Below, one piece after another: positions 33,488-58,309 of a stretch of 64,000 bases of DNA. A program made the position numbers and the translations under genes. The stretch comes from Mytilus trossulus (lineage: Eukaryota), in assembly GCF_036588685.1 (NCBI RefSeq), contig NC_086378.1, forward strand, positions 89,156,001 to 89,220,000, in the 5' to 3' direction. Numbering within the stretch: the stretch's first letter is position 1; each line of letters opens with the position of its first letter. The notes below the pieces were generated by a model. It searched no databases. It was given only the letters and a program-made list of their open reading frames with translations, and was not told the origin of the DNA.

Positions 33488-33565
33488 GAAAGGTGAAGGT
33501 CACAATCGAGGAAAGGTGAAGGTCATAATCGAGGAAAGGTGAAAGTCACAATCGTGGAAAGGTGA
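33488..33565 (+). repeat. 21-bp tandem repeat inside a Penelope-like relic
   Basis: ggaaaggtgaaggtcacaatc(ga) about 3.5 times. Confidence 0.8.
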
Positions 33566-34661: not shown

Positions 34662-36542
34662 TTAAGTGTTATGTCTAAATGATATTGCATATTTTAGTTT
34701 ATCCCAAAATAACACATCTCCAATTTTAAGATAGGTTTGAGAATTGAGACAACTTTTCAAATCAGGATCAATATTATCCAAAGAAATATTACCCTTCAAC
34801 ACAATTATCAAATGACGACCTTTATCGTGTAAACTTTTCCTCAAAGCTGTTCGGAACTCCATCATACACCATTCACTCCTCAAGAAATCATTGGTTATAA
34901 GTAAGATGGTGTGATAGCTGTTTTCAACACTGTTGTATATATTATCAGCTATGGTATTACCAACTATAAAATCTCTATGATGAAGACAGAGACTGCATGC
35001 TTTCCCAGCGTCATCTGACTCCAACTTAGGTAAAGCTGTATGTATAACCCATTCAACATCTTTCTCGCTGTAGGCAATAAATGCATCATACTCTTTTTCA
35101 ACGGCTGTGACACTTCTGAGTTCACATGGACATTTTATATTGAGTCGAGTAAACAAAATAACTTTGATCATATTCCTGAAATAGATTGTCAATAAAGTTA
35201 TAATGATCAATGTTATTGTTATGATGCTAAAAACAACTACTTGAAAGTTTACAATTGTCTCCTTGATACAGTTAAGATCTGTAGCGGACATATTTAATAG
35301 CTTACGTCCACGGAATTTGGAGGGTTTTGAACACTCTAGCGACCCAAGGTAATCATAAACTTTTGGCATAGTCTTTGAAGTTAGATATGCCATTACTTCA
35401 AGTACTCCACAATCACATACAAACGGATTTTCACTGATGTCGACTTTAACAAATTCATGAGTTGAGAATGAGTCTATCATATGTTTTGTTAGTGAAGTTA
35501 TATTATTACGCCGTAAATCGATTGTTACGACTGATTTGTTTTTTCTCACAGCTAATCCGTAATCTGGTATCATAGGAAGGACTTGTATGTTATTTTTAGA
35601 AAAGTCTATATATTCCATTACTGGGAATCGTCGTTGCCAGCCTTGCATTTTATAATAAGTGTCAAACATCCCATTATTAGAAAAATTCAATATTTTGAGA
35701 CTTACTGCAACGTCGGTATACAAAATCTTATTGATGTCATTCTTTCTAAGGTTCTCTTTCTTCCCACTCATTTCATAAACCTCAAGGTTGTTGTACAAAC
35801 AGGATCTCTTCTGTGTGTTAAAATAATAGTTATGTTGATTGAGTGCAGTGCTGAAATCAAACAAATGCTGGTTTTCTAAATCTTCAAATGTCACATTTGT
35901 CCCCCTCTGAATAATTGAAAAAGCATTTTCCGGTCCACATTCTGCAGCTCTTGTTATAGGCGAGTTTGCTTTTGGTATTGAGTCATATAAGTCTCCAACC
36001 CTTTGACTAATAATGACGTTGTCCATTTGAAGATATTTAATTGTGTCGGGAATGCTATTTATCAACTCATTCTTGTAATCGGCTCTGTAATCTTTGATTC
36101 GACAGTCTTTGATGTAAATACTATTTAGTTTGTCAGCTCTGAACGGCCAGGGAAAGTGTATGATACCATCTTCACAAGTAACGGATACGTCAAATCTTAT
36201 ATTTGATGATACTTTATCTGTAAAATTTCTAAATTCTGATAACTTGATACTGGAATCACCTTGAATAACACATACAATGTCAAAGTAACTGTGTCTAAGA
36301 TGTGATATATTACATAGCCGACTCCAGTTCTCATGACTTTCAAACTCATTCATCACATCAGAAAAATTGGTAATTTTTTCTATGGAATTATTCATCTGCT
36401 GTTGTTTTACAACCCAATTATCATTCCTTTCGTTTGTTACGGTAACGATATTAAGTTTAAGTCCAAATAAAGGAAAAATATTAAGGATTGTGATTGTGAC
36501 ATAGTATCTCATTCTGAACCGTTTCCTTGAAATGTATTTCAT
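34662..36542 (-). CDS. Toll-like receptor A (short ectodomain, LRR-LRRCT-TM-TIR), single coding exon
   Basis: 626-aa ORF; by alignment to the paralog the start is probably 36512. Hydrophobic N-terminus; LRRs LKILNFSNNGM, MEYIDFSKNNI and IDLRRNNITSL; LRRCT ENPFVCDC...LECSKP...LNC; TM VVVFSIITITLIIITLLTIYF; TIR boxes YDAFIAYS, LCLHHRDFIVG, FLRSEWC and FWDKL. Confidence 0.95.
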   Translation of the reverse strand: MKYISRKRFRMRYYVTITILNIFPLFGLKLNIVTVTNERNDNWVVKQQQMNNSIEKITNFSDVMNEFESHENWSRLCNISHLRHSYFDIVCVIQGDSSIKLSEFRNFTDKVSSNIRFDVSVTCEDGIIHFPWPFRADKLNSIYIKDCRIKDYRADYKNELINSIPDTIKYLQMDNVIISQRVGDLYDSIPKANSPITRAAECGPENAFSIIQRGTNVTFEDLENQHLFDFSTALNQHNYYFNTQKRSCLYNNLEVYEMSGKKENLRKNDINKILYTDVAVSLKILNFSNNGMFDTYYKMQGWQRRFPVMEYIDFSKNNIQVLPMIPDYGLAVRKNKSVVTIDLRRNNITSLTKHMIDSFSTHEFVKVDISENPFVCDCGVLEVMAYLTSKTMPKVYDYLGSLECSKPSKFRGRKLLNMSATDLNCIKETIVNFQVVVFSIITITLIIITLLTIYFRNMIKVILFTRLNIKCPCELRSVTAVEKEYDAFIAYSEKDVEWVIHTALPKLESDDAGKACSLCLHHRDFIVGNTIADNIYNSVENSYHTILLITNDFLRSEWCMMEFRTALRKSLHDKGRHLIIVLKGNISLDNIDPDLKSCLNSQTYLKIGDVLFWDKLKYAISFRHNT

Positions 36543-38099
36543 GGGAAACAGGATGTATCTTGATCCTTAAAAAAATAAACTGAACAAAAAAAGCAGATTA
36601 GAATGCTCTTAGTCTATTTCGTTTGTTTTTCTACATTTCAAAAGACATAAATAAGGATAATAATGGTGTGAACAAACTTGAAGTAATGATAAATAAGAAT
36701 GCTAACGGAACTGTGTACTATCATTTAGTAAAACGTATAGTTCAGACAGTTGTAAAGGATTTCCACAATCTAGTTTAACATTTTTTTAGTAATGATAAAT
36801 AGGTAATATTTAATTAACAACTGTAAAAACAAAAACAAAAATATTACCAGTCTAGATTAAAACCTTCGCGGATACTGTTTTTTTTCAAAATTGGAAAACA
36901 TCACATTGATTGCAAAGCAAAGCTTAAGAAAACAGTTCATAGCAAAAATTTGTTTTTGATTTTGTGCCATATGGTATATCATTACAAGAAAATTATTGTT
37001 TACGTTCTGTATGCATATGCTTTTTGGTAGACAATTATATGATTTGTTTTTTTCTGCACATCCATCAAGCCAGAGAAGCATTTAACAATGTAGTTACTTA
37101 TTTTCTATTATGTCAAAGAAAGACTGTTGCTCCATAGAAATCTTATTTTTGCGTAAGATAACAAGGATTCATCATTTTCTTTTTCGAATAAGCAAACGGC
37201 ACTATATTGTCTTTATGATTTAAAAATATTTTTTTACTGTATTACCTGTTATGGATTGTATGAAAAACTTGAATATAATTGTTTCAACCTTTGTGTTGTA
37301 AATGTAAGGCTTTCAATGACAGTGACCGTTTTTCCACAATTGCGTTGTACAATTGGAGAATGGGAAAAAATTCCAGCTAAATTAGTTCATTATTGTTTCT
37401 TAATGCACTTTGTTTGTTTTGGCGGTAGTAGACAATAGAACTCCTGAGAAACTAGAGCAATTCTTGAAAAGGAGCGACCTTCAATTTCTTGGTAGATCTT
37501 TGATATTAAGTTTAATTTACGATCACGTTTGCAATCGGCTGCCTTGATAATTTTTTTTAAAGATTTTTGGGTCAAAAGCATCAACACTAAAGGTAGCTCT
37601 GAAAAATAGTAGAGCTGAGATTACACGAACTCTAACCCCAGGTCACCAAATGTCGTACCATTCCTAATAAAAATATATGCGACTTATCAAACTCGGAAAG
37701 AGTGACATAACGATGTTGCTTTTTCTTAGCTGAAATGTTTATCAGTTTCAATTTTTCTGAAGCACTAAATCCTTAAAACTATCGGGAAGCAATTATACTA
37801 CCACTTGAAAGAAAAAGAAATCGTTTGTGTCTGTATTTCCCAGAAAAAAAAAACCACAAATACTTAACAATAGATCTGTCAGAAATTTGTAAATTAGATT
37901 CGAATAAAATACTAAATTGAATATCCTGACAGATTATTATAACTAGAATAAAATTATATTCATGACATGAAAGCATGTTAATTCAAGTTTACACTATGAA
38001 TGATAGGGATTGCACATATACCGTAATTATTGAAACCACGTTTCAGAAAAAAAGTTATCAAACAAATTTATTTCGTTTACCTTTATTCATATGATGCTG

Positions 38100-38870
38100 A
38101 GGTCAAAAAGGCACTTCTTAGGAAGACAGAAAAAAAGCTACCAGTATCCTGTAACTTTACTTTCCGCTACATAGATTATGTTTTCTTACATTAAATTATT
38201 CCAAATTTGATAATTTAAATGTTGAAGGAATCTATCTCATCGAACTTGAGATAAAGAAAACAACTCAAAAAGTTAAGTCTGCTTCATTTCTTAAATTAAA
38301 TATTCAAATTAGCTTATGACAATAGAGATGATTTCAGCTTCTTAATTATGAACTTTCCATTTTTATATAGCAATGTTCTATCAGCGCCTGCATACGGATT
38401 ATATATCTCCCAGTTGATACGATACTCTAGGGCTTATATTTCATATCATGTTTTCCTTGATAGGGTGTTGCTACTTATAGAGAAGCCACAAAACCACGAG
38501 TTGAAATTGGTAAAACTTATACTTTCGAAAATTTTACGGACGCCATCACAATTTGGTTGACCGTTACTAAATACCCGTTTCACAGATGAAACCGGATATG
38601 TAACTATTTTCGAAACTATAATCCCGTCCCCATTTTCCGAACGTGACCCTTCCGAATTAGACTTATTACCGGGCTCTTACTAAAAAAAAACCCACTACAA
38701 GTGGTACATGTTGAACAGTATCTACAATATAATCTGAGATCAACCCCAGCTTTTGGTGGGTTCGTGTTACTCATTCTTTAGTTATATATGTTGTGTTTTG
38801 TATACTTTTGTTTGACTTTTGGTCTTTTCTTTTTTTAGCGTTGTCAGCTTAGTTTTAATGTCCCTTTTGT
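38100..38870 (+). mobile_element. Degenerate Penelope-like RT 3' fragment
   Basis: NFPFLYSNVLSAPAYGLYISQLIRYSRA, homologous to 53627-54328. Confidence 0.8.
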
Positions 38871-39191
38871 AACTATTGCCTGGCGGAAAATTAAAAGACA
38901 TCATTGTTTAGTTAAGACCTTTTAGCCGGTTTTTTTTAGACGATTTACAAACTTCTGTCACCGTACAGCATACATTGATATTTACAAAGAAAGAATATCA
39001 ATTTTGTTAATTATTTTGTTTATTCTTGTGTTTTCATTTCAGAAGATGGAATTGCTTCCTGATAGTTTTCGATCTTTTGTTACCATATGCTCGTTTAAAG
39101 AACGTCAATATTTCTTAAAACAAAAGTAATTCTCAGAAAAAAGGAGGTTACAGACCTTGACAAATGAACTATTATATATTATGATTTATAA

Positions 39192-39227
39192 CCCGGATTT
39201 TGATACAGATGATTCCAAGAATTGTAA
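39192..39227 (+). promoter_or_regulatory. Conserved non-coding block upstream of TIR-less receptor A
   Basis: cccggattttgatacagatgattccaagaattgtaa matches 55305-55340 with one mismatch. Confidence 0.5.
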
Positions 39228-39812
39228 CAAAAAAGGTATTATTAATCTAGCTGCGTGTTTATATGAATTTAAATATTGTAAAAATGAAAAGTTTACCTGC
39301 TAGTTCGTTTGATTCAAGGTTCATAATTTGAACATGGTAAGTATACTTAGTTTAATTGTGGTTTATTTGATGCTATTGTTTACGTATTTAGATTTAATAC
39401 ATGATGTGAACACATATTTAACTTATTATTGTAATCATTCGTTATCAATAAAATTATATAAATCCATACCTGATGGTAAGCTGCGATGATTTAAAGTGAA
39501 TAATAAATTGTAATATTAAATAAATCACTTTCCGACCAAATCATTCAGTGATTCTCGAAGCCAAAGTTATAACGATTGAAATCATTGATCACACCATTTA
39601 ATTCAAAGCAGAGAATATTGGAGTTGGGTAATTTTGGTTTTTTACTTTTTTTTTAAATTTAATTTTGCAAGAAGTAACATTTTGTAAGTTAACAGTGAAT
39701 ACTATTATCCTCAAACGGTGTCTTTAAGACGTTTAGTATAAATTTACCAAATGTTTTATCAACAATAGTAGATTCTGCTCTGTATTTGTGCAGTATGACA
39801 TTTAAACAGCTA

Positions 39813-39822
39813 GGGATGTCCC
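39813..39822. promoter_or_regulatory. kappaB-like site
   Basis: GGGATGTCCC fits GGGRNNYYCC and lies ~300 bp upstream of ATG 40113. The homologous position in copy 2 reads GGGTTTTCCC (55914-55923). Confidence 0.4.
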
Positions 39823-40112
39823 CTAAAATATTATTACGTACCCATGTACAAAAAAGAATAAAATATCCGTCTATTTATAACCATGTTCTGCTGAACTAAA
39901 GGAAATACAAAAGAACTTTATTCGAATAGTCGACGAAATAAAAACAAACATTGTATTAATATGATAATTCTAACATTCAAACTTGCAGATGTTTTCTTTG
40001 TTTGTCCTTTAACAGTTAGTTTTAGTACCGTTGCTCTCCCAATAGTGCGAAGAAAACCACGACGGTTCCTAAACACAGTAACATAGCAGATACAGATACA
40101 GAATACGGCATT

Positions 40113-41588
40113 ATGGGTTTTTGTTCGTATCAATCATTATGTGTTGGTCTCCTACTGTTTGTAATATTTGCTCATCACGTGACGACTGAACACAAAAACA
40201 AGATTCAATCAGCAAAGAAATTCTCTCAACTATCAGGGTATGTAGCAGATAATACTACGTTGTCTATCTTACAACCATGGCAACAGTTTTGTAAGGAAAT
40301 AGATTTACCAATACAAGACAAACCTGGTGAATACTATACCGAGATTATTTGTAAAGTCAACAACAATGTTTTAAACTTTCTCGATTTTCGACGCTTTACA
40401 TCCAGAATTAAAGAAGATACGTTATTTTCCGTTGACATAACGTGTGGCCATAATGGAAGCGTTTTCTTTCCATACCCGGGCCGAGCACGTCTCCTCCATT
40501 CATTACGAATATCAGGCTGTATTTTGAATGGATTTACATCCGAAGCCACATCTGATGATATTGATACAATACCTGATAGTATGAAATATTTCACTTTGGT
40601 CAATTCAGTGATATATATGACTCAAAATGATTTTCAACAGTTTCAAGGAGCAAAACATTTGACTAAGTCTTTTCAATGCGGTAATGTAAACGCTATTAAA
40701 ATAATTGAAAACAGTATATCTTGCTGGATTGGTAATGAGAGTAAACGTTCAAGATTAGAAACTTTTCAAGTGCGACCTAATTTCCGTGAACGCACCTGCA
40801 CCTATAAATATCTTCGACATTTGCAGAAAAGTTTTTCAATAATTCAACCATTCACTAGACAGATTGATAAATCTATGTATCCTAATATTGAAATCCTCAA
40901 CTTTAGTGCAGCTAATGTGATTGAAACACCAAAACATTTACAGGAATGGAGGCTAGGAGCAAAGGATTTGAAATATCTAGATCTCAGTCACAACCTAATA
41001 GAAGGTGTTTTTCCTATCATATGTTATGATAAATACAAAGGTGATAGCCCTGAAGGATTTGTAGATTTACGCTATAATAACATATCATCACTCACACAAT
41101 ACGTAATAAGAACATGGTTACGTGATATATGTCATAAACTAACAGTTGATATACGAAATAATCCGTTTATGTGTGATTGCGGTGTAAAGAACTTTCAAAA
41201 CATTTTCCAATATATAGACAATCAAATGGCATCATCATATTATGATGTGAGAGAAAATAATTTCTCTCGTTATACATATCTGTATGATCTTAAATGCTAC
41301 AATCCACCTTCACTGCGGGGGAGAAAAATTTCTAAATTATCACTTAGTGAAATCGGATGCAAGCCTAAATTACAAACAGTAACAACTGTTCCATCAGGGC
41401 TTATTATAGTAGTGATGCTTGTTAGTTTTTTTCTTTGTGTGTGTCTTTTTGTTGGTATCAGATATAGAGAACAAATTGCTGTAAGTTGTAGTAAGTGGCT
41501 TAGTTCTTACTGTCGACCATGTTATAATTTCACGGTTTCTAAGAATGACAATGTGAATGCAATTAACTATACTGATATGACTTTTTAA
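40113..41588 (+). CDS. TIR-less TLR-like LRR transmembrane receptor A (491 aa)
   Basis: Signal peptide; N-terminal Cys region alignable to the neighbouring TLRs; LRRs IEILNFSAANV, LKYLDLSHNLI and VDLRYNNISSL; LRRCT NNPFMCDC...LKCYNP...IGC; TM LIIVVMLVSFFLCVCLFVGI; ~44-aa tail with no TIR. Confidence 0.92.
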   Translation: MGFCSYQSLCVGLLLFVIFAHHVTTEHKNKIQSAKKFSQLSGYVADNTTLSILQPWQQFCKEIDLPIQDKPGEYYTEIICKVNNNVLNFLDFRRFTSRIKEDTLFSVDITCGHNGSVFFPYPGRARLLHSLRISGCILNGFTSEATSDDIDTIPDSMKYFTLVNSVIYMTQNDFQQFQGAKHLTKSFQCGNVNAIKIIENSISCWIGNESKRSRLETFQVRPNFRERTCTYKYLRHLQKSFSIIQPFTRQIDKSMYPNIEILNFSAANVIETPKHLQEWRLGAKDLKYLDLSHNLIEGVFPIICYDKYKGDSPEGFVDLRYNNISSLTQYVIRTWLRDICHKLTVDIRNNPFMCDCGVKNFQNIFQYIDNQMASSYYDVRENNFSRYTYLYDLKCYNPPSLRGRKISKLSLSEIGCKPKLQTVTTVPSGLIIVVMLVSFFLCVCLFVGIRYREQIAVSCSKWLSSYCRPCYNFTVSKNDNVNAINYTDMTF

Positions 41589-41596
41589 ATGTTTAT

Positions 41597-41941
41597 GTAA
41601 ATGATTGGAGCCCTGAGCTTTCAACCCTACGTCACAATCACATCAGTAAATGATTGGAGACCTGAGCTTTCCACCCAACGTCACAATCACATCAGTAAAT
41701 GATTGGAGCCCTGAGCTTTCCACCCTACTCCACAATCACATCAGTAAATGATTGGAGCCCTGAGCTTTCCACCCTACGTCACAATCACATCAGTAAATGA
41801 TAGGAGCCCTGAGCTTTTCACCCTACTTCACAATCACATCAGTAAATGATTGGAGCCCTGAGCTTTCCATCCTACGTCACAATCACATCAGTAAATGATT
41901 GGAGCCCTGAGCTTTCCACCCTACGTCACAATCACATCAGT
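41597..41941 (+). repeat. 49-bp minisatellite x7
   Basis: Unit gtaaatgattggagccctgagctttccaccctacgtcacaatcacatca, starting just after the stop codon of the 40113 gene. Confidence 0.95.
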
Positions 41942-42273
41942 TAATGTATTAATAAAACCATCGATATTTATTGTTTTAACTGAATACTCCATCTAATATT
42001 TATACCGCATAGCCAACAATGGTCTCATATAGTTTTGACAGAAGTTATCATCTCGGACATGATTTCAATATTCGACTGCAAAACACCAAAGGCCAATTCA
42101 ATATAAAAAAATGTAAGCAGATTCTAAATTCTATGTCAAAAAGGTTTTTGGGGTACGACAAAACAAAGCATCAGTGGAATGGTATTTTTATTCAACCTAT
42201 TTTACTACATGACAGATACTATATATAGGTAGATGATAGTTATCAAAGGTACCAGGCTGACAATGCATTTAAT

Positions 42274-42317
42274 ACGCCAGATGCGCGTTTCGTCTACATA
42301 AGACTCATCAGTGACGC
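42274..42317 (-). ncRNA. Minimal type I hammerhead ribozyme (PLE/retrozyme type), near intact
   Basis: The minus strand reads gcgtca-CTGATGA-gtct tatgt agac-GAAA-cgcgc-ATC-tggcgt. Stems I and II pair; stem III is a short palindromic-type stem. Confidence 0.7.
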
Positions 42318-44488: not shown

Positions 44489-44673
44489 GGACCCCTGATA
44501 ATGGTAGATCTGTCATAATAACTAGATATATTGAAGAAGAATTAAAATATAAATATATAAATATAAACATGAAATCAATAATTTTCATATTTGATTATAT
44601 TCAAATAGTGCATCTTAAAATGACCATCCCAAGCTTAACTACCGAAACAAGAAATTATTTTTGTGTCGGGTCC
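44489..44673 (+). ncRNA. Hammerhead-like fold with a very long loop II
   Basis: ggaccc-CTGATAA-t-ggtag-[131 nt]-ctacc-GAAA-caagaaattatttttgt-GTC-gggtcc, in the 3' region of the Penelope-like element. Confidence 0.55.
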
Positions 44674-44703
44674 TATCAGCAATATGGGATGCGTTGTTGC
44701 ATG

Positions 44704-47679: not shown

Positions 47680-47985
47680 GTAGGTCACATTCTGAAAAGA
47701 GGACAGGATTTTAGTAACGGCATGAGAACATATTCGTTATCATCTGTGGAACAAATATTTTATAAAGGTCAACCAACTCGTGATGGTGTCCCAAACAATT
47801 GATGAGTTCACTACTTGGAACTCTTGGTTTAATAGTAATCCTCTATCAAGGAAATCATGATAGGAAATACAAAGCCTGAAAGGTCGTATCAACTAGGAGA
47901 TGATATATACCCGTGTGTAGGAACTGCTGGAATGATGCTACATAGACACAGAAAGTTCACAATTGGAAAGCTAACGTCATCTCGG
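47680..47985 (-). mobile_element. Penelope-like RT 3' relic
   Basis: Nucleotide similarity to 53590-53920 (ggtcaaccaactcgtgatgg, ttggaactcttggtttaatag, aaagttcacaattg). Confidence 0.7.
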
Positions 47986-48268
47986 TATATAGATGTGTCA
48001 CACAATTTATCAATCAAATTGACAAAATTGATAAAAAAATATTTTAATCTAAAACAACACGTCTCTTAGGTTATCACAACAATGCAGAAATAAATAAAGG
48101 CTGGACTATTTATGAGATTATAGTTTTTGTACCATATTTAACAAAAAAGAAATAAGTTATTTTTAAAATGATAAACATCTTGTACTGTATAAAAACCTTC
48201 AAATAGACAATCAACCACACACAAAACTGCGCACACACAGTTATATGTACAAAGACATTTTGTTAATT

Positions 48269-50107
48269 TTATTGTCGTAATGATATTGCATATTTCAGTC
48301 TATCCCAAAATAACACATCTCCAATCTTAAGATAGGTATGAGAATTGAGACAACTTTTCAAATCAGGATCAATATTATCTACAGTTATATTACCCTTCAA
48401 CACAATTATTAAGTGACGACCTTTATCGTGTAAACTTTTCCTCAAAGCTGTTCGGAATTCCATCATGCACCATTCACTTTTCAAGAACTCATTAGATATC
48501 AGTAAGATGGTGTGATAGCTGTTTTCAACACTGTTGTATATATTATCAGCTATAGTATTACCAACTATAAAATCTCTATGATGAAGACATAGTCTGCATG
48601 CTCTCCCAGCGTCCTCTGTCTCCAATTTTGGTAAAGCTGTATGTAAAACCCAGTCCATATCCTTCTCGCTGTAGCCAATAAATGCATCATATACTTTTTC
48701 TTCGTGTGCGACATTTCGGAATTCACATGGTAAGTTTATATTGAGTCGAGTAAACAAAATTACTTTGATCATATTTCTGAAATATATTGTCAAAAAAGTT
48801 ATGACGAACAATGTAATTGTTATGATGCCCATAACGACGACTGGAAAATTGATGACTGTTTCCTTATTACAGTTTAGTTCTGTCGACGACAGAGTTATCA
48901 TCTGACGTCCACGGACTTTTGAGGGATTTTCACACTTTAGAGTTCTGAGGTAATCATAAGCTGTTGGCATAGTCTTTGCAGATAAATATTCCATTACTTC
49001 AATTATTCCACAATCACATAAGAAAGGATTTTCACTGATGTCGACTTTAACAAATTCGTGTGTTGAGAACGAGTCTATCATACCTTTTGTTAATGAAGTA
49101 ATGTTATTACGCCTAATATCTATTAATCCTACTGCTTTTGTCTTTTTCACAGTCATTCCGTAATCTCGTATCATTGGAATAACTTTTATGTTATTATTGG
49201 AGAAGTCTATATATTCCATTACTGGAAATCGTAGTCGCCAGCCTTGCAATTTATAGATAGTGTCAAACATCCCGTTACCAGAAAAATTCAATATTTTAAG
49301 ATTTTCTGCAACGTCTGTATGAACAATCTTATTGACATCATTTTTTTCTAAATCTTTCATTCCACTACTTTCAAAAACTTCAAGGTTGTTGTACAAACAG
49401 GTTCTCTTCTGAATGTTAAAATAATGATTATATTGCTGGATTGCAGTTTCGAGGTCAAACATAAAATAGTTGTACATATCTTCAATGTTCGCCATTGTTC
49501 CTCTTTGAATAATAGAGAAAGCATTTTCAGGTCCACATTCTGCAGCTCTTGTTATAGGCGAGTTAGCCTTTGACAATGAGTCGTATAATTCTCCAATCCT
49601 TAGGATAATAGTGACGTTGTCCATTTGTAAATGTTTGATTGTGTCGGGAATGCTGTTAATTAACGAATTCTTGAAATCAGTTCTGTAATCTTTAATTCGA
49701 CAATCTTTGATGTAGATTCTATTTAGTTTGTCTGTTCTGAATGGCCAAGGAAAGTGAATGATACCATCTTTACAGATAACGGATAAGTCAAATCGGATAT
49801 GTGACGATATATGATTCGTAAAATTTCTAAATTCTGATAACTTTATACTGGAGTTACCCTCAACGATACACACAATATCAAAGGCAATGTGACCAGTTTG
49901 TGATATATTACATAGCCTATTCCAGTTCTCAAGGCTTTCAAACTCATTCATAACATAAGAAAAATTGGTATATGTATCTTTTGATCTATTTGTCCGTTCT
50001 TCAGTTGCCAACTCAATACTCCTTTCTGTAGTAACGGAACAGATGTATAATGCAAATCCAAGTCGAAGCAAGGGATACATATTTGAAATTGTGATAACAT
50101 TTTTCAT
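48269..50107 (-). CDS. Toll-like receptor B (paralog of 34662-36542), 612 aa
   Basis: Same architecture as TLR A and colinear along its full length: signal peptide, Cys region, 3-4 LRRs, ENPFLCDC LRRCT, TM, TIR (YDAFIGYS, LCLHHRDFIVG, FWDRL). Confidence 0.95.
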   Translation of the reverse strand: MKNVITISNMYPLLRLGFALYICSVTTERSIELATEERTNRSKDTYTNFSYVMNEFESLENWNRLCNISQTGHIAFDIVCIVEGNSSIKLSEFRNFTNHISSHIRFDLSVICKDGIIHFPWPFRTDKLNRIYIKDCRIKDYRTDFKNSLINSIPDTIKHLQMDNVTIILRIGELYDSLSKANSPITRAAECGPENAFSIIQRGTMANIEDMYNYFMFDLETAIQQYNHYFNIQKRTCLYNNLEVFESSGMKDLEKNDVNKIVHTDVAENLKILNFSGNGMFDTIYKLQGWRLRFPVMEYIDFSNNNIKVIPMIRDYGMTVKKTKAVGLIDIRRNNITSLTKGMIDSFSTHEFVKVDISENPFLCDCGIIEVMEYLSAKTMPTAYDYLRTLKCENPSKVRGRQMITLSSTELNCNKETVINFPVVVMGIITITLFVITFLTIYFRNMIKVILFTRLNINLPCEFRNVAHEEKVYDAFIGYSEKDMDWVLHTALPKLETEDAGRACRLCLHHRDFIVGNTIADNIYNSVENSYHTILLISNEFLKSEWCMMEFRTALRKSLHDKGRHLIIVLKGNITVDNIDPDLKSCLNSHTYLKIGDVLFWDRLKYAISLRQ

Positions 50108-51745
50108 TATGAACCGTTTCCATCAAATATATCAGATGGGATACCGGATGTAATCTTGGTCCTTATAAAATGAGCAGATATATACTTATATAAAAAGCTG
50201 AACGACTCAATTACTTTTTTTAGCGAATAGAATGCTTTAATCTGTCTGATACAGATACATAAAGTATATAAATAGCTCATAAAATAAGGAAAATGACGAT
50301 TTAAACAAATTGATATAATAATAATAATAACAAGTTTACTGAACTGTACTGAAACTAATTACAATGACAGTCGTAAATGTTTTCCTCAATCTCACTTTTA
50401 TTATGATAAATAGGTAACATTTAAAGTTACATTTCAATACATTTAAATCTAACAAATCCAGAATCATTAAATCCTCACGGATACTCGATTCTCCTAGGCC
50501 GGCTTCCCATTTAATTTTGTATATCAAAGATTTAAAAATGTTCACATCACTAATTAAAAGCTTACTATTCAATAAAACAAACGTGTATTATTGGGATACA
50601 AAATAATGGTTACCGTCTGTATGAATATGTTTTGCTTTACTATTATATTTAATGTTTTCATAAACACTTCATGTTAGCCAGGTTATAATATCACAATGTA
50701 ACGGAATGGCAATCATATTATATTTCAACGGTTTGACACCTAAACCATATACATGAAAATGCGAAACAATATCAACGGAAAACATAGCGATCTTATTTAC
50801 AAAAATACAATTAACTTATGACTTGGGTAAATAACCAACTATTCAATTAAGTACGCTCAAAAGATCCATACAGACCACGCACCACTCAAACAATACTCAA
50901 ATAAAAAGCACCGATATGATACACTAACCACTTGCAGTTGTTGTAAAAATATAAATTAAAGCCAATCAACATAGCTGATTTTTGTAGCTGAAAATTTCGA
51001 ATTTGCCATCTCAGTACAATAATCTATATCAAACGAGGAGACTCTAATTTTGAAATTTAAATTTCCCTCACCTTAGCAGCAATTTATTCTCTTCACCTGT
51101 ATATAGAATATATATTTCCCAACTCAATTAGCATTCAAGAGCTTGCAGCTACTATATTGAATTTATTAAACGTCACCAGTTTCTGAGCAAAAAGCTGATG
51201 AACCGGGGTTATGTTAATGAATGTCTTTTCCTTTTTATATATGATATAAAGTCATCGGAAGATATCAAGACCTTCATTCTCTTGTGAAGAGTTGTCTCAT
51301 TGCTAATCATACCACATCTTCTTTTTTTTATAAATTTATAAATAAAAATCAACTTCAGAACGGTTTGGAAGTATACATTATAGATACTGACGTTGTCTGT
51401 TATCCACGCATTCACAAATGCATCAACATAAATAATCAGCATAAATACTTATGTCACACAAATTTTCGGGACAGAAAATTGTGTTGCAGTCATGAACCAT
51501 TTTTTTGTAATGAACAATCAAAAGGCGAAAGTAGTCTGAGTTATCAGCATTGTCAGGTGCAGTACAGGCGATATATTTAGTTTAATATGAATAAGCACAT
51601 TGCCTTTCTTTTCCACAACCTATATAGATACACACAGGGAGAAAGACAGAGGTGATATTTGGTTATTTTGATAAAAGATGTGTTCAAAATTGAAAATGTT
51701 AATGTTGGATGCTATAAGAATTGTTTATATTTTAATTTTATATCG

Positions 51746-52897
51746 TTTTTTTTTTTTTAAGTTAAAATATGTTTTATTATAAAATCTATTTAAACATGAC
51801 ATTCATTGACATTTCATGATTAAAACAAAAATGATGATGAAAAATACAGCACTTTCAGTCATTTCTTTTACATTGCTCCATAGCAAAAAGATAATAATGT
51901 AGCTGTTAGCCTGTAGGTCAGTGAAGCCGATGAAACTTAAAATATTTTACACAGTTAAATTTTAAATTCATCATGAACATGTATAAATACTTGACAATAT
52001 CATAAAAACTACTCAAATTTTGTTCTGAAGAAAGATGACAGGATTGTTGCCCCTTGAATGGGATGAATAAAATAATGATTTTATATACAATGATAAATAT
52101 ACAATCATCTAAGATGAACAATATATACAAATGATCAACTATACATAACAGAAATTGTACATTTCTTGATCCAGGATACCCCCCAATTGTTCACGATACA
52201 GAATCGCCAGTGTTTATTCATCATCATCTTCATCCTCCTCCTCCTCTTCTTCATCATCGTCATCTTCCTCTTCTTCACTCTCTGGCTTGGCTTTCTTTGC
52301 TGGGGGTCCTGCAGGTTTCTTTGCTGAAGCTGCACCACCTCCCCTGTATTTTGCCATTGCCTGTTCATATCTGATTTTATCTGCGGCTGCCTGTTTTTCA
52401 TATTTTGTTCTATCTGTTTGTTTCTCCCACCGTTTTCCCATCTCCTTGGCTACGAGTGCTACTGACTAATCACCATGATCTTTCCTTACTTTTGGTCTTT
52501 CTTCATTACAGAAGAAAAAGAATGCAGAAAGTGATCTCTTTGGTGCATTAGGATCTTTGTCTCTCTTCTTTCTGCCGACCTTCTCTCCTGGTCCTGGCTC
52601 ATAATTTTGCATTTCTAGCTCATATCTAGCTTTGTCTTTCTCTGCCATTTCTTCATATTTCCTCTTTTCCTTGGCACTGATTTCCCTCCATTTTTCTGCA
52701 CACTTTTTTGTGAATTCAGCAAAAACAACTTTTTCTGTTGGATTTTTCTTCTCGTGTTCCTCTCTGAATGACTGCACAAAGAAGGCATAAGATGACATAC
52801 GTCCACGGGGCTTTCCGTCCTTCTTTCCCATCTTGATTTATTATTGATTTAAATAGTTCTATACCCAAGCTGGAAATGTCGCAATGATAACCCACGC
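51746..52897 (-). pseudogene. HMGB: Processed retrocopy of HMGB (two HMG boxes plus acidic tail) with one nonsense codon
   Basis: Intronless frame 52831-52214 ([33 protein letters not shown] tail) interrupted by an in-frame TAG at 52466-52468. AATAAA at 51773-51778, A13 tail at 51746-51758, TSD taattttatatcg at 51733-51745 and 52898-52910. Confidence 0.95.
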
Positions 52898-53329
52898 TAA
52901 TTTTATATCGTCAAATATTAAGTAGGACAATCTGACCATATGGTGAAAAAAGAGTTAAATGAACAAATCTACAATAAAAGTAGCATTTTCATATCATAGA
53001 CAATTCAATGGACCATATTAGGCGTGGCTTAATAATAATTTTGCTAAATCTTAAAAAAACGTATCAGGGAATACATGCAATGAAAGAGGGTGAGTTCATA
53101 GTACATCGCTCACAAATATGCTCTGGGGTAATAGATGGGAAACTGTACCGCTATTTTCAATTAATAATCTATGGAAGCAAGCACAAAACGGTCAGATTAT
53201 TATATCAAACCTCGGCAGAAGAGTGAAGATAGCTATAACAGTATTCCTGAATGATGGAAGAAGGCAATTTAACAATTATGAGACTGCCTGTCATATTCAC
53301 TAAATTATGGAAATAAGAAAGAATCAAAA

Positions 53330-54330
53330 GTGAAAGAGGGACGAAAGATACAAAAGGGACAGTCAAACTCATAAATCTAGAATAAAACGTCATGGCTAAA
53401 AATGAGGAAGACAAACAGACAAACAATAGTACATATGACACAACATAGAAAACCACAGAATAAACAACGCGAACCCCATCAAAAACTAGGGATGATCTCA
53501 GGTGTTCCGGAAGGGTAAGCAGATCCTGTTCCACATGTGGCACCCGTCGTGTTCCTTATGTGATAACAAATCCGGTAAATAGTATAATTCGGTAGGTCAT
53601 ATTCATGAAAGGGAAGGGGATTGTAGTTACGACTTAAGGTACATAACCGATATCATTTGTGAAACGGTTATTCTATAACGGTCAACCAACTCGTGATGGC
53701 GTCTGTAAAATTTACAAAGGAATGTTTTCAACTTCACCATTTGGAACTCTTGGTTTAATAGCTGCCTTGTGAGCAGCAACCCTCTATCAAGAAAATCATG
53801 ATAGGAAATGCAAGCACGGACATATCGTATCAATTGGGAGATATATACCCCGTATGCAGGTGCTGTTGGAATGTTGCTACATAGAAATGGAAAGTTCACA
53901 ATTGAAAAGCTTAAATCATCACTTTTGTCGTAAAGTTTATTTTTCAACCGACGCTCATTATCAATTTCTAGATGTAAGTCAAGATACGAGTCCGACCTAA
54001 CTGTATCTGTAGTATCCTTTATCTCTAGTTTGTTGGGATAGATGCGTTCAATATAGTCACCACATTTTGCATTATTTAGTGAAAGAACATCATCTATATA
54101 GCAGAAAGTAGAGTTAAAGGGTAATGCTAACTTCTTTTCTTTTTCCTCAGAAGTTCCAGCCTCATAATAATAAAGAAATAAGTCGGCAAGTAGAGGGGCG
54201 CAGTTTGTTCCCATTAGAATGGCGGCAGTTTGTTGAAAAACACGTCCTTCGAACGTAACAAATATGTCTTCAATCAATAAATCAAGCATCTTGATTATAT
54301 CAGTTTCTTGAAACTTGATACATAGCAATA
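53330..54330 (-). mobile_element. 5'-truncated Penelope-like retroelement (RT C-terminal half plus 3' region)
   Basis: MGTNCAPLLADLFLYYYE, YIDDVL, YLDLHL, KLYDK, PAYGVYISQLIRY. The 3' region also occurs alone at ~31040-31250. Confidence 0.88.
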
Positions 54331-54672
54331 TAAGAATACCTTATTGATTGGAAAATTTATTTATATAGAATTTTTCAATATCTAGAGTGGAATAATTTAA
54401 TTTGATGTGATGAATCGTACCATGGATATTGCATTCAATTTTCATTGTATTTTCATAAGTTATATTTTTTTATACCTTTTTTTTTTTAAAACAAGATGTG
54501 CGTTGGTCTCTTTCTTATTGAGCCGGGCATTGTCAGTTATTTCCGATCTATCAGTTTGAATGTCCTTCTGGCATCTTTCGCTTTTCTTTTAATCGCTTTA
54601 AAAGGGACCGTAATTTGCCTTATGAATGACAATTAAGTTATTCTACAAAAGACCTTGATAAGCTATTATATA

Positions 54673-55276
54673 TGTTACGGCCAGAAATCGCCTTTAAATT
54701 GTAGCCAACAAAAGACACAAATCAATAGTAAAATTTAACAATATTTAATATACAAAAGTTTACAAAAGGTATTACACAAATATTACTGTTAACTTAACTG
54801 TCAAAATATGAGTCCAATCTGTTATCTTTATCTGTATCCGGAAATCTTTCGGAATCCAATTTGAATATTACGTTCACTACTAATGTCACAATCGAGTATG
54901 ATGTTGTTTGTAGAATAAAAGTGTCAATCCAAATGCTGTGAATACCAATGTCTATCAATGTCTATGTCCAAGTTTAATTATGAGAGGTTAACTTAAGTGT
55001 CTGTATATATAGTGTTGTCATGGAAAATTCTAGAACACTCTATAATGGAACATTGTGGAAAATCCTGGAAAGTTACAACGGAAGTTTCTGGAATAACGTA
55101 GAACTTTAAATTACGCATCTTTTATAAGGATAATTCTAGAAAGTTCCAATCATTCTGTGATTGTTCCAGTGATTCTTAAACTGCACAGTTATAAGATTAT
55201 TTGGTAAACAACTATCAGGCCATACAACACAAATTTGGCCAATATAAATAAACATAATAATTACAATATCATAACA
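54673..55276. mobile_element. Solo LTR (604 bp)
   Basis: TGTTA...TAACA termini with a 4-bp TSD tata. The paralogous region at ~39152-39195 shows the empty site (gaccttga...ctattatata...atttataac). Confidence 0.8.
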
Positions 55277-56235
55277 TATAAAATTATTTATAACGCGTTA
55301 TTTGTCCCGGATTTTGATAAAGATGATTCCAAGAATTGTAAAAGTATAATTAAACTTGTTGTTTGTGTACTTTATTATAACATGTAAGGGATGATTTCAA
55401 TTTTAACATGGTTGGAACGAAAAGGCTAGTTAATTCGATGCGAGTTTTCGAATATAGAAAGGTAGGTATAATTATTTAGTTGGTAGTTTATTTTATAATA
55501 GTTTTGAAGCTCTTACATTTAATGTATTCTTTGATCATGTACATGTCTTTTTATTGTAATCCTTTATGGCAATGCCACTGTGACGATTCAAAGTTTGACA
55601 CATAATAGCACACATAAGATTCTAATTCCGATTTAACTATTCAGTGATACTCGAAGCAAACATCTTCAGGAATCTGGGACCATAGACAAACGGCACACAG
55701 TTGACACCATATAAAAGACGACAAGGTTATAAAGAGCAAAATGGTTGAACTCTTTCAGATACACGATTGAATTAAAAGCATGCCTGCTAACTTCAAAACC
55801 TCCATGGATATATTATAGTACACTGTCAGACGTCAGATATACATTTTCATAATTCTTTTTCAACAATGGCAAATTGCAATCTGTATGTTTGCAACATAAC
55901 CATGGAACAAATAGGGTTTTCCCTCACAAGATTTTTTATAAAAAAAAAGACATGTTCGAGAAACAACACAATACCTCTGTTGAACATAAGTAAATACAAA
56001 AGCTATTACTTGTCTTTCTTGATGAAATAGAATTAAAGTGTTATATGCTTGTTTATTTACACTGAATAACTGCCATTTTTTTTTTATTTGATAGCAATAA
56101 CATTGAAAAGAAGCCATCAAACAGTTGGACTAAGTCACGCTGCTCTTCTTCTAGTGCGGAAACTTCCGCGAAAGGTTCCTACACTGCTTAACAACACATT
56201 GTACACGAGTAGTTACAAGCGGCGAATACGACATT

Positions 56236-57640
56236 ATGGGTTATTGTTTACTTCAACCATGCCGATTCCATGTTACCGTCTTACTGTGTATATTATTTAT
56301 TCATCATGTGAATACTAAAAATAAGATTCAATCAGAAAAGAAATCACTAAAACTGTCAGGTTATGAACTGAATAATATTACGTTTTCTGTCTTACAACCA
56401 TGGGATAAATTTTGTTACATAAATGAGTTACCAAAACTAGACAAAGCTAGTGAATACTATAGCGAGATTATTTGCAATGTCAACAACAATGTTTTAAACT
56501 TTCTTCATTTTCGAGGCTTCACATCCAGAACTAAAGAAGATACGTTATTTTCCGTTGACATAACATGTGGTCATAATGGAAGCGTTTTCTTTCCATACCC
56601 GGGCCGAGCACGTCTGCTCCATTCATTACGAATATCAGGCTGTGTTTTGAATGGATTTACATCCGAGGCAACATCTGATGATATTGATACAATACCTGAT
56701 AGTATGAAATATTTTACTTTGGTCAATTCAGTGATATATATGACTCAAAATGATGTTCAACAGTTTCAAGGAGCAAAACATTTGACTAAGTCTTTTCAAT
56801 GTGGTAATATAAACGCTATTAAAATAATTGAAAACAATATATCTTGCTGGATTGGTAATAAGAGTAAACGTTCACGATTAGAAACTTTTCAAGCGCGACC
56901 TAATTTCCGTGAACGCACCTGCACCTATAAATATCTTCGACATTTGCACAAAAGTTTTTCAATAATTCAGCCATTCACTAGACAGATTGATAAATCTATG
57001 TATCTTAATATTGAAATCCTCAACTTTAGTGCTGCCAGTATAATAGAAACACCAAAACAGGTTCAGGAATGGAGACTCGATTCAAAATATTTGAAATATT
57101 TTGATCTAAGTCAAAACTTAATAGAAGATGTGTACCCTATAATATGTCACGATAGCAACAACAGTGATAGGCCCGAAGGATTTGGAGATTTACGTTATAA
57201 TAACATATCATCTCTCAGACTATTTGGATTCACGAAATTGGTCCATTTCATTTGTGATAAGCTAACAGTTGATATTCGAAACAATCCATTTAGGTGTGAT
57301 TGTGAAATAAAGCACTTTCAAGACTTTTTAGAAAAATACATTATAAATCGTACTGCATCTTTTTTTTAGGTATATGCATGGAGAACAAACAGTTTTCTCT
57401 CGTTATAAATATCTGTATGATCTTAAATGCTACAATCCACCTTCACTAAGGGGGAGAATTATATATGAGCTATCACTTAGTGAAATCGGATGTAAGCCCA
57501 AATTACAAGTTGTTACACATATTCCGACAAAGCCAATTATAGCAGTGATGCTTGTTAGTTTATTTCTCTGTGTGAGTCTTTTTGTTGGTTTCAGATATCG
57601 AGATAAAATGGCTGTAAGTTGTAGTAAATGGCTAAAGTAG
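56236..57640 (+). pseudogene. TIR-less LRR-TM receptor B, split by a +1 frameshift in a T8 run (377-aa ectodomain-only ORF; 467 aa if repaired)
   Basis: ORFs 56236-57369 and 57374-57640 are colinear with the 491-aa paralog. Deleting one T at 57360-57367 joins them as ASFFRYMHGEQTVFSRY. This could be an assembly error. Confidence 0.8.
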
Positions 57641-58309
57641 GTTCTTCCTGTCGATAGTGATATCATTAAACAGATGATAAGAATGCAAAAAAAATGAATA
57701 AAAATTATCATACTTATAATACTTTTAGTGTGTATTTTTGTCTTAATAATATATGATTTACCACTTGGATGATCTTCGAAGACAGCCGACGGCTATATAA
57801 CCTTCTATTCACATAAATGTAAAAACCAATAGATGGCGAGTACCTCCAATTAAATTTTCTAGGTTTGTTTGATTTGATTATATTGAAGATTAGAATTTTA
57901 ACCTGTATAAGAAAGTTTTTTTTGTGGATCGAATCCGTCAACAGAATGGTTCGTCCCTGTTTCACTTTCGATGTTGACATTCTTTACCTGTAAAAAAGCT
58001 GAATCTATGGGTAGCCCATAAGGGATTATGTTGAAAGTCACATAAATCAAGATTCTATGAGGTTGATTTATTCACTTGCGAGTGAAAAATCTATCAACGA
58101 CATTTCTTTGCTTATTTGACAAAAAGTTCACCATACTGGCTGCTAAACTATAAATACGATTTATTATTTCAACATTTTATTTTCATTTAAGTTTGAACAA
58201 AAATATAATTTCTGAATGTTTTATATCTCGTAGATAATGGCCATTTAAGCCCTCCTTCACTTGTTCAGTTACTGTAAATATAAAGACATTGATACTCATT
58301 GTTTTACTC

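What the first reader, a model, noticed from the sequence alone, without database searches (positions are those of the whole stretch)
34662..57640. Duplicated head-to-head module: signalling TLR paired with a TIR-less paralog of its own ectodomain
Seen: the arrangement [TLR <- -> TIR-less LRR-TM] occurs twice (34662-41588 and 48269-57640). The 3' UTRs (34545-34625 vs 48003-48085) and intergenic blocks are homologous, so the pair was duplicated as a unit. The partner shares the TLR ectodomain motif by motif but is strongly diverged from it, so the pairing is older than the duplication. Known: vertebrate RP105/CD180 is a TIR-less TLR4 homolog that modulates TLR4; plant sensor/helper NLRs such as RPS4/RRS1 sit head to head; Hydra splits LRR and TIR between two proteins. 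Inference: this may be a co-regulated paired-receptor system (co-receptor/sensor or decoy plus signaller). I do not know of one described for bivalve TLRs.
Basis: partly seen in the sequence, partly recalled or inferred. Interest (0 to 1): 0.88.

Follow-up and report, generated by a model that had tools for sequence, protein, structure and literature searches.

The report
Duplicated mussel TLR plus TIR-less neighbour
In a mussel (Mytilus) immune-gene cluster, a Toll-like receptor gene and a neighbouring receptor-like gene that has lost its signalling domain were copied together as a unit. This order is kept in related mussels, but nothing yet shows that the two proteins work as a pair.

Summary
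T1 (34662-36542, -) and T2 (48269-50107, -) are intronless LRR-TM-TIR receptors. P1 (40113-41588, +) and P2 (56236-57640, +) have the same kind of ectodomain and a membrane helix but no TIR. The two [T<- ->P] units are colinear in coding and flanking DNA, so they were duplicated as one block.

The gene order T1-P1-T2-P2 recurs in M. edulis and M. galloprovincialis. All P orthologues lack a TIR, and P1/P2 dN/dS is 0.44-0.50, so P is a maintained gene.

Three corrections apply:
- P is not a copy of T. It falls in the sister subclade, whose nearest TIR-bearing member is a TLR gene about 9.7 kb downstream of P2, just past the window end.
- P2 carries a +1 frameshift in a T8 run in this assembly.
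- TIR loss is recurrent in this family. At least five other LRR-TM genes in this genome lack a TIR, and none has a TLR within 10 kb. About half of 149 family representatives lack a TIR.

The ATGs are 3.5 and 6.1 kb apart, with transposon debris between them.

Best reading: a birth-and-death TLR cluster with a conserved, non-signalling TLR-like gene.

The parts
34539..34633 (-). 3' flank (probable 3' UTR) block of T1, homologous to 48000-48094
   Evidence: blastn 83% over 95 bases, colinear with the coding match
34662..36542 (-). T1: intronless short-ectodomain Toll-like receptor, 626 aa (LRR ectodomain, membrane helix 429-456, TIR 485-593)
   Evidence: ORF; Pfam TIR E 3.4e-12; hydropathy; orthologues in M. 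edulis and M. galloprovincialis at 86%
36543..40112 (.). Spacer of pair 1 (3.5 kb between the ATGs). Gene-proximal blocks 36649-37092 and 39148-40083 are weakly homologous to pair 2; a transposon fragment lies at 38110-38874
   Evidence: Sensitive blastn; no family-related coding relic by profile search
40113..41588 (+). P1: TIR-less TLR-like gene, 491 aa (signal peptide, LRR ectodomain with LRRCT, membrane helix 422-451, about 40-aa tail)
   Evidence: ORF; no TIR by Pfam; AF2 model is an LRR solenoid plus membrane helix, pLDDT 74; a 491-aa member from this 91,445,414-bp contig with NCBI as a source is on record; orthologues 88-90% identical and also TIR-less
41597..41946 (.). 49-bp x 7 tandem repeat starting 9 bases after the P1 stop. 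The flank at 41937-42134 is homologous to the edges of the satellite downstream of P2
   Evidence: TRF; blastn
48000..48094 (-). 3' flank block of T2, homologous to 34539-34633
48269..50107 (-). T2: duplicate of T1, 612 aa, TIR-bearing
   Evidence: 74% aa and 82% nt identity to T1; Pfam TIR E 2.9e-12; dN/dS to T1 0.33, dS 0.45; orthologues at 92-93%
50108..56235 (.). Spacer of pair 2 (6.1 kb), enlarged by insertions: an intronless HMG-box ORF at 52466-52831 (-) and transposon-like ORFs at 53205-54328 (-)
56236..57640 (+). P2: duplicate of P1, broken by a +1 frameshift in a T8 run (57360-57367). The first frame ends at 57369; the second frame runs through the LRRCT and membrane helix to a stop at 57640
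   Evidence: 83% nt identity to P1 over 40101-41585 ~ 56224-57726; dN/dS to P1 0.44-0.50, dS 0.30-0.37; intact 469-471-aa orthologues in M. galloprovincialis, an intact 469-aa P-type protein in M. coruscus and a shorter 405-aa model in M. edulis
58310..60283 (.). 47-bp x 42 satellite downstream of P2, marking the far edge of the colinear duplicated block
   Evidence: TRF; blastn to 41937-42134

Best explanation
This is a segment of a Mytilus-specific, tandemly evolving cluster of short, intronless TLR genes on a 91-Mb chromosome of M. trossulus.

Layout. The local order is T1<- ->P1 T2<- ->P2(frameshifted) ->L003. L003 is a 659-aa TIR-bearing TLR that starts about 3.3 kb past the window end.

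History (shown). T and P belong to two sister subclades of one family. P arose from the L003/L004-like subclade by loss of everything after the juxtamembrane segment. The [T,P] block, from the T 3' flank to the satellite beyond P, was then duplicated once, before M. trossulus, M. edulis and M. galloprovincialis split. The P genes are kept by purifying selection and are TIR-less in every species seen.

Mechanism (inferred). P is most likely a functional, membrane-anchored, signalling-incompetent LRR protein. It probably binds ligand or forms non-productive dimers with related TLRs, and so tunes TLR output in the way known TIR-less TLR homologues do.

Pairing (inferred). The head-to-head position next to T is most likely a historical by-product of cluster growth, frozen by the block duplication, rather than a sign of an obligate T-P pair. 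If P has a preferred TLR partner, L003-type receptors, its closest kin, are at least as likely as T.
For: Structure and duplication: searches show colinear homology at 34539-36574 ~ 48000-50170, at 36649-37092 ~ 50282-50700, at 39148-41585 ~ 55261-57726, and in the satellite flank.

Phylogeny: the T clade has 100/100 support. P groups with L003 and two other TIR-bearing proteins (99/96) and with L004 (91/88). P1 is 39% identical to L003 against 27-29% to T.

Selection: dN/dS is 0.33 for T1/T2 and 0.44-0.50 for P1/P2. dN of the P pair (0.13) is no higher than that of the T pair (0.15).

Cross-species order from consecutive accession numbers, with orthology from trees: M. edulis CAG2184651-56 reads T1 (two pieces), P1, T2 (two pieces), P2. 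M. galloprovincialis VDI78753-58 reads P2, P2', T2, ?, P1, T1. M. coruscus CAC5415041/42 reads P, T.

Recurrent TIR loss: L005, L007, L011, L009 and L008 are T-clade genes of 435-476 aa that end before the TIR (four just after the membrane helix; L009 shows no membrane helix), with dN/dS about 0.35. No family or TIR gene lies within 10 kb on either side of them, nor of the TIR-bearing L004 and L006. Of 149 family representatives, 72 have a TIR, 24 have a membrane helix but no TIR, and 53 have neither.

No hidden TIR exon or relic was found.
Against: - Conservation of the T-P neighbourhood in three to four Mytilus species, with P kept intact and TIR-less, is also what a functional pair would show.
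- No expression data could be obtained, so co-regulation is untested.
- Adjacency in other species rests on accession order, not on coordinates or strands.
- dS differs somewhat between the two gene pairs (0.45 against 0.30-0.37). This needs rate variation or gene conversion if one event made both.
- The proposed modulatory mechanism is by analogy only.
Confidence: 0.6

Rival explanations
1. Paired receptor. T and P are co-regulated from the divergent spacer and act together, with P as co-receptor, sensor or decoy for the T signaller.
For: Divergent orientation in both units, duplicated as a block. The order is kept in M. edulis and M. galloprovincialis, and adjacency in M. coruscus. P is under purifying selection and consistently TIR-less. 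T and P share ectodomain architecture, including 10 invariant cysteines.
Against: This is one independent occurrence only. P is phylogenetically closer to L003 than to T. Five other TIR-less LRR-TM genes and two other TIR-bearing family members have no such neighbour within 10 kb. The spacers are 3.5-6.1 kb and tolerate transposon and retrocopy insertions. P2 is frameshifted in this genome while T2 is intact.
Confidence: 0.15
2. P is a decoy or regulator of its own parental lineage (L003/L004-type TLRs), or of the family in general, in the way RP105 relates to its closest paralogue TLR4. Its position next to T is irrelevant.
For: P's nearest TIR-bearing kin is L003 (39%), which lies about 9.7 kb downstream of P2 on the same strand. 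The juxtamembrane motif is shared with L003 and L004.
Against: No binding or expression data exist. At 39% identity the ectodomains may no longer share ligands or interfaces.
Confidence: 0.15
3. P genes are decaying remnants of truncated TLR duplicates with no function.
For: P2 has a frameshift here. No M. trossulus P2 protein appeared among database hits, whereas P1, T1 and T2 did. M. trossulus P2 is less like its orthologues (82-83%) than P1, T1 or T2 are (86-93%).
Against: dN/dS of 0.44-0.50 is well below 1. Full-length P ORFs with the same end points occur in four species: P1-type in M. trossulus, M. edulis and M. galloprovincialis, P2-type in M. galloprovincialis, and an unassigned P-type in M. 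coruscus. The frameshift sits in a homopolymer and may be an assembly error or one allele.
Confidence: 0.07
4. P transcripts splice to a distant TIR exon, so P is really a canonical TLR.
For: None was found. All TIR-less family members end at the same juxtamembrane boundary, which could in principle mark a splice site.
Against: No TIR-like coding sequence lies between P1 and T2 or between P2 and L003 (tblastn E<=5 and a family profile), nor within 10 kb downstream of the other TIR-less genes. TIR-bearing relatives are single continuous ORFs. Public gene models of the orthologues stop at the same codons.
Confidence: 0.03

Closest known systems
Mussel short-ectodomain single-cysteine-cluster TLRs, probably the 'X' (formerly Ls-type) group of Saco et al. 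2023 (PMC10279657)
   Same: T1, T2 and L003 are intronless LRR-TM-TIR proteins of about 610-680 aa with few canonical LRR hits. They sit in tandem clusters that differ in copy number among Mytilus species, as that paper describes for mussel TLRs.
   Different: Assignment to group X is inferred from the description, not tested against their sequences. That survey required LRR+TM+TIR, so genes such as P1 and P2 were excluded by design.
LRR-only 'TLR-like' proteins of invertebrates (Orus-Alcalde et al. 2021, PMC8609888; Hydra HyLRR with HyTRR)
   Same: P has a TLR-type ectodomain and a membrane anchor without a TIR, the class noted as numerous but left unanalysed.
   Different: In Hydra the TIR partner has no LRR ectodomain, so the split is complementary. 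Here the neighbour T is a complete TLR, and P is demonstrably a secondary TIR loss inside a TIR-bearing clade.
Vertebrate RP105/CD180 (TIR-less TLR4 paralogue) and soluble or decoy TLRs such as fish TLR5S
   Same: A TLR ectodomain retained without a TIR, under selection, and plausibly modulatory. The best Foldseek hit of the P1 model happens to be RP105 (E 4e-6).
   Different: There is no orthology. The fold hit is generic LRR (TM-score 0.29, with Nogo receptor, NGL-3 and FLRT equally close). RP105 regulates its closest paralogue, whereas P's neighbour T is not its closest paralogue. No MD-1-like cofactor was sought.
Head-to-head plant NLR pairs (RRS1/RPS4, RGA4/RGA5)
   Same: Divergent orientation of two related immune receptor genes, duplicated as a unit.
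   Different: From general knowledge, plant pairs share very short promoters, recur as pairs across many paralogous loci, and are genetically co-required. Here the spacers are 3.5-6.1 kb, the pair is a single event, and co-requirement is untested.

Membership tests
Canonical Toll-like receptor (LRR ectodomain + one membrane helix + cytoplasmic TIR) | Cytoplasmic TIR domain | tested here: met
   For T1 and T2: Pfam PF01582 E about 3e-12, above the gathering score. L003 also meets it.
Canonical Toll-like receptor (LRR ectodomain + one membrane helix + cytoplasmic TIR) | Cytoplasmic TIR domain, for P1 and P2 | tested here: not met
   No TIR by Pfam at E<=0.1. The tail after the membrane helix is only 17-40 aa. 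No TIR-coding DNA lies downstream. P is therefore TLR-like, not a TLR.
Canonical Toll-like receptor (LRR ectodomain + one membrane helix + cytoplasmic TIR) | LRR ectodomain with LRRCT and a single membrane helix | tested here: met
   Weak Pfam LRR hits in all four proteins. One hydrophobic helix each (for P2 it lies in the second frame). The AF2 model of P1 is an LRR solenoid matching TLR and other LRR structures.
RP105-type regulatory TIR-less TLR homologue | TLR-type ectodomain and membrane anchor with a short tail lacking a TIR | tested here: met
RP105-type regulatory TIR-less TLR homologue | Is the closest paralogue of the TLR it is proposed to regulate (here T) | tested here: not met
   P groups with L003 and L004, not with T; 39% against 27-29% identity.
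RP105-type regulatory TIR-less TLR homologue | Physical association with, and modulation of, a signalling TLR | not testable with these tools
   This needs co-IP and reporter assays. The one complex prediction returned no answer (see Tried and rejected).
Head-to-head paired immune receptors (plant NLR-pair type) | Divergent orientation with a short shared promoter region | tested here: not met
   The orientation is divergent, but the ATG-to-ATG distance is 3571 and 6129 bases with transposon and retrocopy insertions, and only gene-proximal blocks are alignable. Transcription starts are unknown.
Head-to-head paired immune receptors (plant NLR-pair type) | Pairing recurs at independent paralogous loci | tested here: not met
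   Five other TIR-less LRR-TM genes (L005, L007, L011, L009, L008) and the TIR-bearing L004 and L006 have no family or TIR neighbour within 10 kb. The secreted LRR-only arrays were not checked in the same way.
Head-to-head paired immune receptors (plant NLR-pair type) | Pairing conserved at the orthologous locus in other species | tested here: met
   Gene order from consecutive accessions in M. edulis, M. galloprovincialis and M. coruscus, with orthology from trees. Strand and distance were not verifiable.
Head-to-head paired immune receptors (plant NLR-pair type) | Co-expression and genetic co-requirement | not tested

The most novel reading that the evidence does not exclude
T and P form a true invertebrate paired-receptor module: a signalling TLR and a membrane-bound, TIR-less TLR-like partner, transcribed divergently, co-duplicated, and kept together at least since M. 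trossulus split from M. edulis and M. galloprovincialis. P would gate or broaden recognition by T. That would be a lophotrochozoan analogue of TLR4/RP105 with the genomic logic of plant NLR pairs.
Probability: 0.12. Interest if true: 0.7.

Novelty: new member of a known kind. Interest (0 to 1): 0.35.

Why it matters
Bivalves hold the largest TLR repertoires known, but published surveys count only genes with all three parts (LRR, TM, TIR). This locus and its family show that TIR-less derivatives, both membrane-bound and secreted, make up roughly half of one mussel TLR family. They arise repeatedly at the same juxtamembrane boundary and are kept under purifying selection across species.

These genes are therefore a systematically overlooked layer of candidate TLR regulators. 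The conserved T-P neighbourhood gives a concrete, cheap test case: two genes, four species, and orthologues already annotated. The question is whether such derivatives act on neighbouring TLRs, on their parental lineage, or independently.

As it stands, the locus itself is an ordinary product of tandem duplication in an immune gene cluster.

Tried and rejected
Strand and distance of T and P in other species could not be read, so accession order was used instead.
There is no expression, splice or read-level check of the P2 frameshift.
- Complex prediction on T1 residues 40-470 with P1 residues 25-465 returned 'no answer' (score 0.00, folded without alignments). This is no evidence for or against binding.
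- The bacterial-type promoter/terminator scan of the spacer gave counts equal to shuffles and does not apply to an animal genome.
- TIR relics and hidden family exons were sought by tblastn with T1, T2, L003, L004 and L014 and by a family profile against six-frame pieces of 20000-34500, both spacers, 41589-48000 and 57700-67346. Nothing scored above 3.1 bits. The weak hits at 42256-42339 and 61975-62151 are noise. There is therefore no third degraded T upstream of L003.
- The Foldseek top hit to RP105 was rejected as evidence of kinship, because it is a generic LRR similarity.
- The search of earlier findings by words returned nothing.
- Literature searches found no description of TLR/TIR-less divergent pairs in bivalves. 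Absence from this library is not proof of absence.


Full report
WHAT IS THERE

The window is G000:C6:89156001-89220000.

- T1, 34662-36542 (-), 626 aa.
- P1, 40113-41588 (+), 491 aa.
- T2, 48269-50107 (-), 612 aa.
- P2, 56236-57369 (+), 377 aa, continuing in another frame to 57640.

T1 and T2 have a Pfam TIR domain (E about 3e-12), one membrane helix and weak LRR hits. P1 and P2 have weak LRR hits only. P1 has a membrane helix at 422-451 followed by about 40 residues.

Amino-acid identity is 74% for T1/T2 and 76% for P1/P2. T1/P1 is 27% (E 6e-40), in one alignment from the N-terminal region through the LRRCT and membrane helix. Ten cysteines are invariant in an alignment of 23 family members, both TIR-bearing and TIR-less.

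An AlphaFold2 model of P1 (pLDDT 74, pTM 0.68) is an LRR solenoid with a C-terminal membrane helix. Foldseek finds only generic LRR ectodomains: RP105, NGL-3, Nogo receptor, TLR3/8 and FLRT, with TM-scores of 0.25-0.39.

P2 IS BROKEN IN THIS ASSEMBLY

The P2 frame ends at a TAG formed at the end of a run of eight T (57360-57367). Reading resumes one frame over and runs through the LRRCT and membrane helix to a stop at 57640. M. galloprovincialis P2-type proteins are intact (469-471 aa) and end at the same final residues; the M. edulis model is shorter (405 aa) and the 469-aa M. coruscus P-type protein, not assigned to P1 or P2, ends almost alike.

No M. trossulus P2 protein appeared among database hits, although P1, T1 and T2 models from this contig did. 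M. trossulus P2 is 82-83% identical to its orthologues, against 88-90% for P1, 86% for T1 and 92-93% for T2. Whether the frameshift is real, one allele or a homopolymer error cannot be decided without reads.

DUPLICATED AS A UNIT

Colinear DNA matches run from the T 3' flank to beyond P:
- 34539-34633 ~ 48000-48094 (83%).
- 34656-36574 ~ 48257-50170 (82%).
- 36649-37092 ~ 50282-50700 (62%).
- 39148-40083 ~ 55261-56193 (59-68%).
- 40101-41585 ~ 56224-57726 (83%).
- 41937-42134 against the edges of the 47-bp satellite at 58310-60283.

The centres of the spacers do not align. They hold a shared transposon fragment in opposite orientation (38110-38874 ~ 54157-53346). In pair 2 they also hold an intronless HMG-box ORF and other transposon-like ORFs.

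Synonymous divergence is 0.45 for T1/T2 (0.53 in the ectodomain, 0.27 in the TIR) and 0.30-0.37 for P1/P2. These are of the same order but not identical. One block duplication is the simplest reading. It also means that the two occurrences count as a single independent event.

WHERE P COMES FROM

Searching the whole genome with P1 gave a surprise. After P2, its best relative is not T but a 659-aa ORF at C6:89223347-89225323 (+). That ORF begins about 3.3 kb beyond the window end and about 9.7 kb downstream of P2. It is 39% identical to P1 and carries a Pfam TIR domain (E 4e-19). I call it L003.

A maximum-likelihood tree on 427 ectodomain and membrane columns gives two sister clades:
- Clade T (100/100) holds T1, T2 and L006 on another chromosome, all with a TIR. 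It also holds L005, L007, L011, L009, L008 and a protein from another source, all without one.
- The second clade holds L004 (TIR), L003 (TIR), two TIR-bearing proteins from other sources, and the P group (supports 91/88 and 99/96).

P is therefore a secondary TIR loss inside a TIR-bearing lineage that is sister to the T lineage. It is not a diverged copy of its neighbour.

All TIR-less members end in the juxtamembrane segment, shortly before the first TIR motif. No TIR remnant or other family relic lies after P1 or P2, in the spacers, or upstream of L003.

CONSERVATION IN OTHER MUSSELS

P-type proteins exist in M. edulis, M. galloprovincialis and M. coruscus. All are TIR-less. In the trees, P1 and P2 each group with their own M. 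edulis and M. galloprovincialis orthologues, and T1 and T2 do the same (100/100). The duplication therefore predates the split of these three species. The position of the M. coruscus and M. californianus copies is unresolved for both genes.

Consecutive accession numbers give the gene order:
- M. edulis CAG2184651-56: T1 (two model pieces), P1, T2 (two pieces), P2.
- M. galloprovincialis VDI78753-58: P2, P2', T2, one unknown gene, P1, T1.
- M. coruscus CAC5415041/42: P, T, with a second P at CAC5415047.

The neighbourhood is conserved at the orthologous locus.

IS P FUNCTIONAL?

P1/P2 dN/dS is 0.44-0.50, against 0.33 for T1/T2. The P pair's dN (0.13) is not higher than that of the T pair (0.15). 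Together with intact orthologues that end at the same position, this argues for a maintained gene, with possible recent loss of P2 in this individual. The T-clade TIR-less genes also show dN/dS of about 0.35.

IS THE PAIRING A RULE?

No. TIR loss is common in this family:
- This genome has five further T-clade ORFs without a TIR. Four genes lie on the minus strand at C6:83.33-83.42 Mb; three of them have the membrane helix and L009 ends before it. At least one of these is named 'toll-like receptor 10' in RefSeq. One more (L008, with the helix) lies at 66.8 Mb.
- It also has at least eight secreted LRR-only genes of 364-379 aa, in arrays at 48.0 and 57.9-58.2 Mb.
- Among the 149 representatives that HMMER finds in 1.8 billion proteins, 72 carry a TIR, 24 have a membrane helix without a TIR (mostly 458-527 aa) and 53 have neither.

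I fetched 10 kb on both sides of the five TIR-less T-clade genes, and of the TIR-bearing L004 and L006. Neither a family member nor any TIR was found there. The genome-wide TIR search lists none near them either.

The divergent TLR/TIR-less arrangement is thus unique to this locus within the family in this genome. The spacers (3571 and 6129 bases between ATGs) accept transposon and retrocopy insertions, and only the gene-proximal 0.5-1 kb is still alignable, at about neutral identity. That fits two separate promoters better than one compact bidirectional promoter, though transcription starts are unknown.

MECHANISM

Shown: the domain make-up, the origin by TIR loss, the block duplication, the conserved order and the purifying selection.

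Inferred: P is displayed on the membrane with a TLR-like ectodomain and cannot recruit TIR adaptors. By analogy with RP105, soluble TLR5 and other decoy TLRs (the Ciona paper PMC12816324 summarises these), it most likely tunes TLR responses by binding ligand or by forming non-productive dimers.

Which TLR it acts on is open. Similarity favours L003-type receptors, and position favours T. I put the specific T-P pair at about 0.15.

COMPARISON WITH WHAT IS KNOWN

T1, T2 and L003 fit the short-ectodomain single-cysteine-cluster mussel TLRs that Saco et al. 2023 call group X, formerly Ls-type. They also fit that paper's picture of species-specific tandem duplication. I infer the group assignment from their description only.

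That survey, and Orus-Alcalde et al. 2021, required LRR+TM+TIR. They set LRR-only 'TLR-like' proteins aside while noting that these are numerous. I found no paper describing divergent TLR/TIR-less pairs in bivalves.

The P genes are new, undescribed members of a known kind: TIR-less TLR-like proteins. The paired-receptor reading remains a hypothesis.

LIMITS

- No locus DNA from other species could be fetched.
- The complex prediction gave no answer and is not used as evidence.
- The dN/dS values are simple Nei-Gojobori estimates from my own script.
- The two halves of P2 were analysed separately, or joined with X at the break.

Noticed in passing
L027:3347-5323 (+), i.e. G000:C6:89223347-89225323, about 3.3 kb past the window end: A third TIR-bearing TLR of the cluster (L003, 659 aa). 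It is the closest TIR-bearing relative of P1 and P2 and lies on the same strand as P2, about 9.7 kb downstream. No divergent partner or relic lies upstream of it.
   Followed up: yes
G000:C6:83335461-83420148 (loci L005, L007, L009, L011) and C6:66785317-66786690 (L008): Five T-clade genes of 435-476 aa without a TIR; four end just after the membrane helix and L009 before it. Four form a same-strand array with 14-37 kb spacing. At least one 462-aa gene of this array is named 'toll-like receptor 10' in RefSeq. dN/dS is about 0.35. No TIR lies within 10 kb.
   Followed up: partly
G000:C6:48.00-48.07 Mb and 57.92-58.24 Mb (loci L018-L025): Arrays of secreted LRR-only relatives (364-379 aa) that end right after the LRRCT, with no membrane helix. 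They form the outgroup clade of the family tree.
   Followed up: partly
window 41597-41946 and 58310-60283: Tandem repeats directly downstream of both P genes: 49 bp x 7 starting 9 bases after the P1 stop, and a 47 bp x 42 satellite about 670 bases after the P2 end, with homologous flanks. A repeat-bearing element may mark the old truncation point of the P ancestor.
   Followed up: partly
window 52466-52831 (-): An intronless 121-aa ORF with an HMG box (Pfam E 2e-25) that breaks off in the second box. It looks like a truncated HMGB retrocopy inserted in the T2-P2 spacer, where G+C rises locally.
   Followed up: partly
window 53205-54328 (-), 38110-38874, 30966-31325 (+): Fragments of one repeat family (70-80% identical, different orientations) with ORFs that have no Pfam hit. 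They are probably transposon debris and account for the non-colinear 'homology' between the two spacers.
   Followed up: partly
window 17148-18277 (-): Retroelement remnant: a 200-aa ORF with RNase H (Pfam E 8e-11), followed by a 141-aa ORF without a hit.
   Followed up: no
window 41490-41588 (P1 residues about 460-491): The P1-specific extension of the tail is identical in the M. galloprovincialis orthologue but absent from the M. edulis models. It contains a Y-x-x-M/Y-x-x-hydrophobic motif (YTDM) that could be a sorting or SH2-binding site. This is speculative.
   Followed up: no
G000:C40:2172235-2174105 (loci L017, L026): A copy of the chromosome-13 family member (L006) split into two ORFs of 301 and 339 aa on a small contig. 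It is either a broken paralogue or an alternative haplotype.
   Followed up: no
window 43859-43981 and 33472-33566: Small perfect or near-perfect tandem repeats (41 bp x 3 at 100%; 23 bp x 4 at 90%) in the flanks of the units.
   Followed up: no
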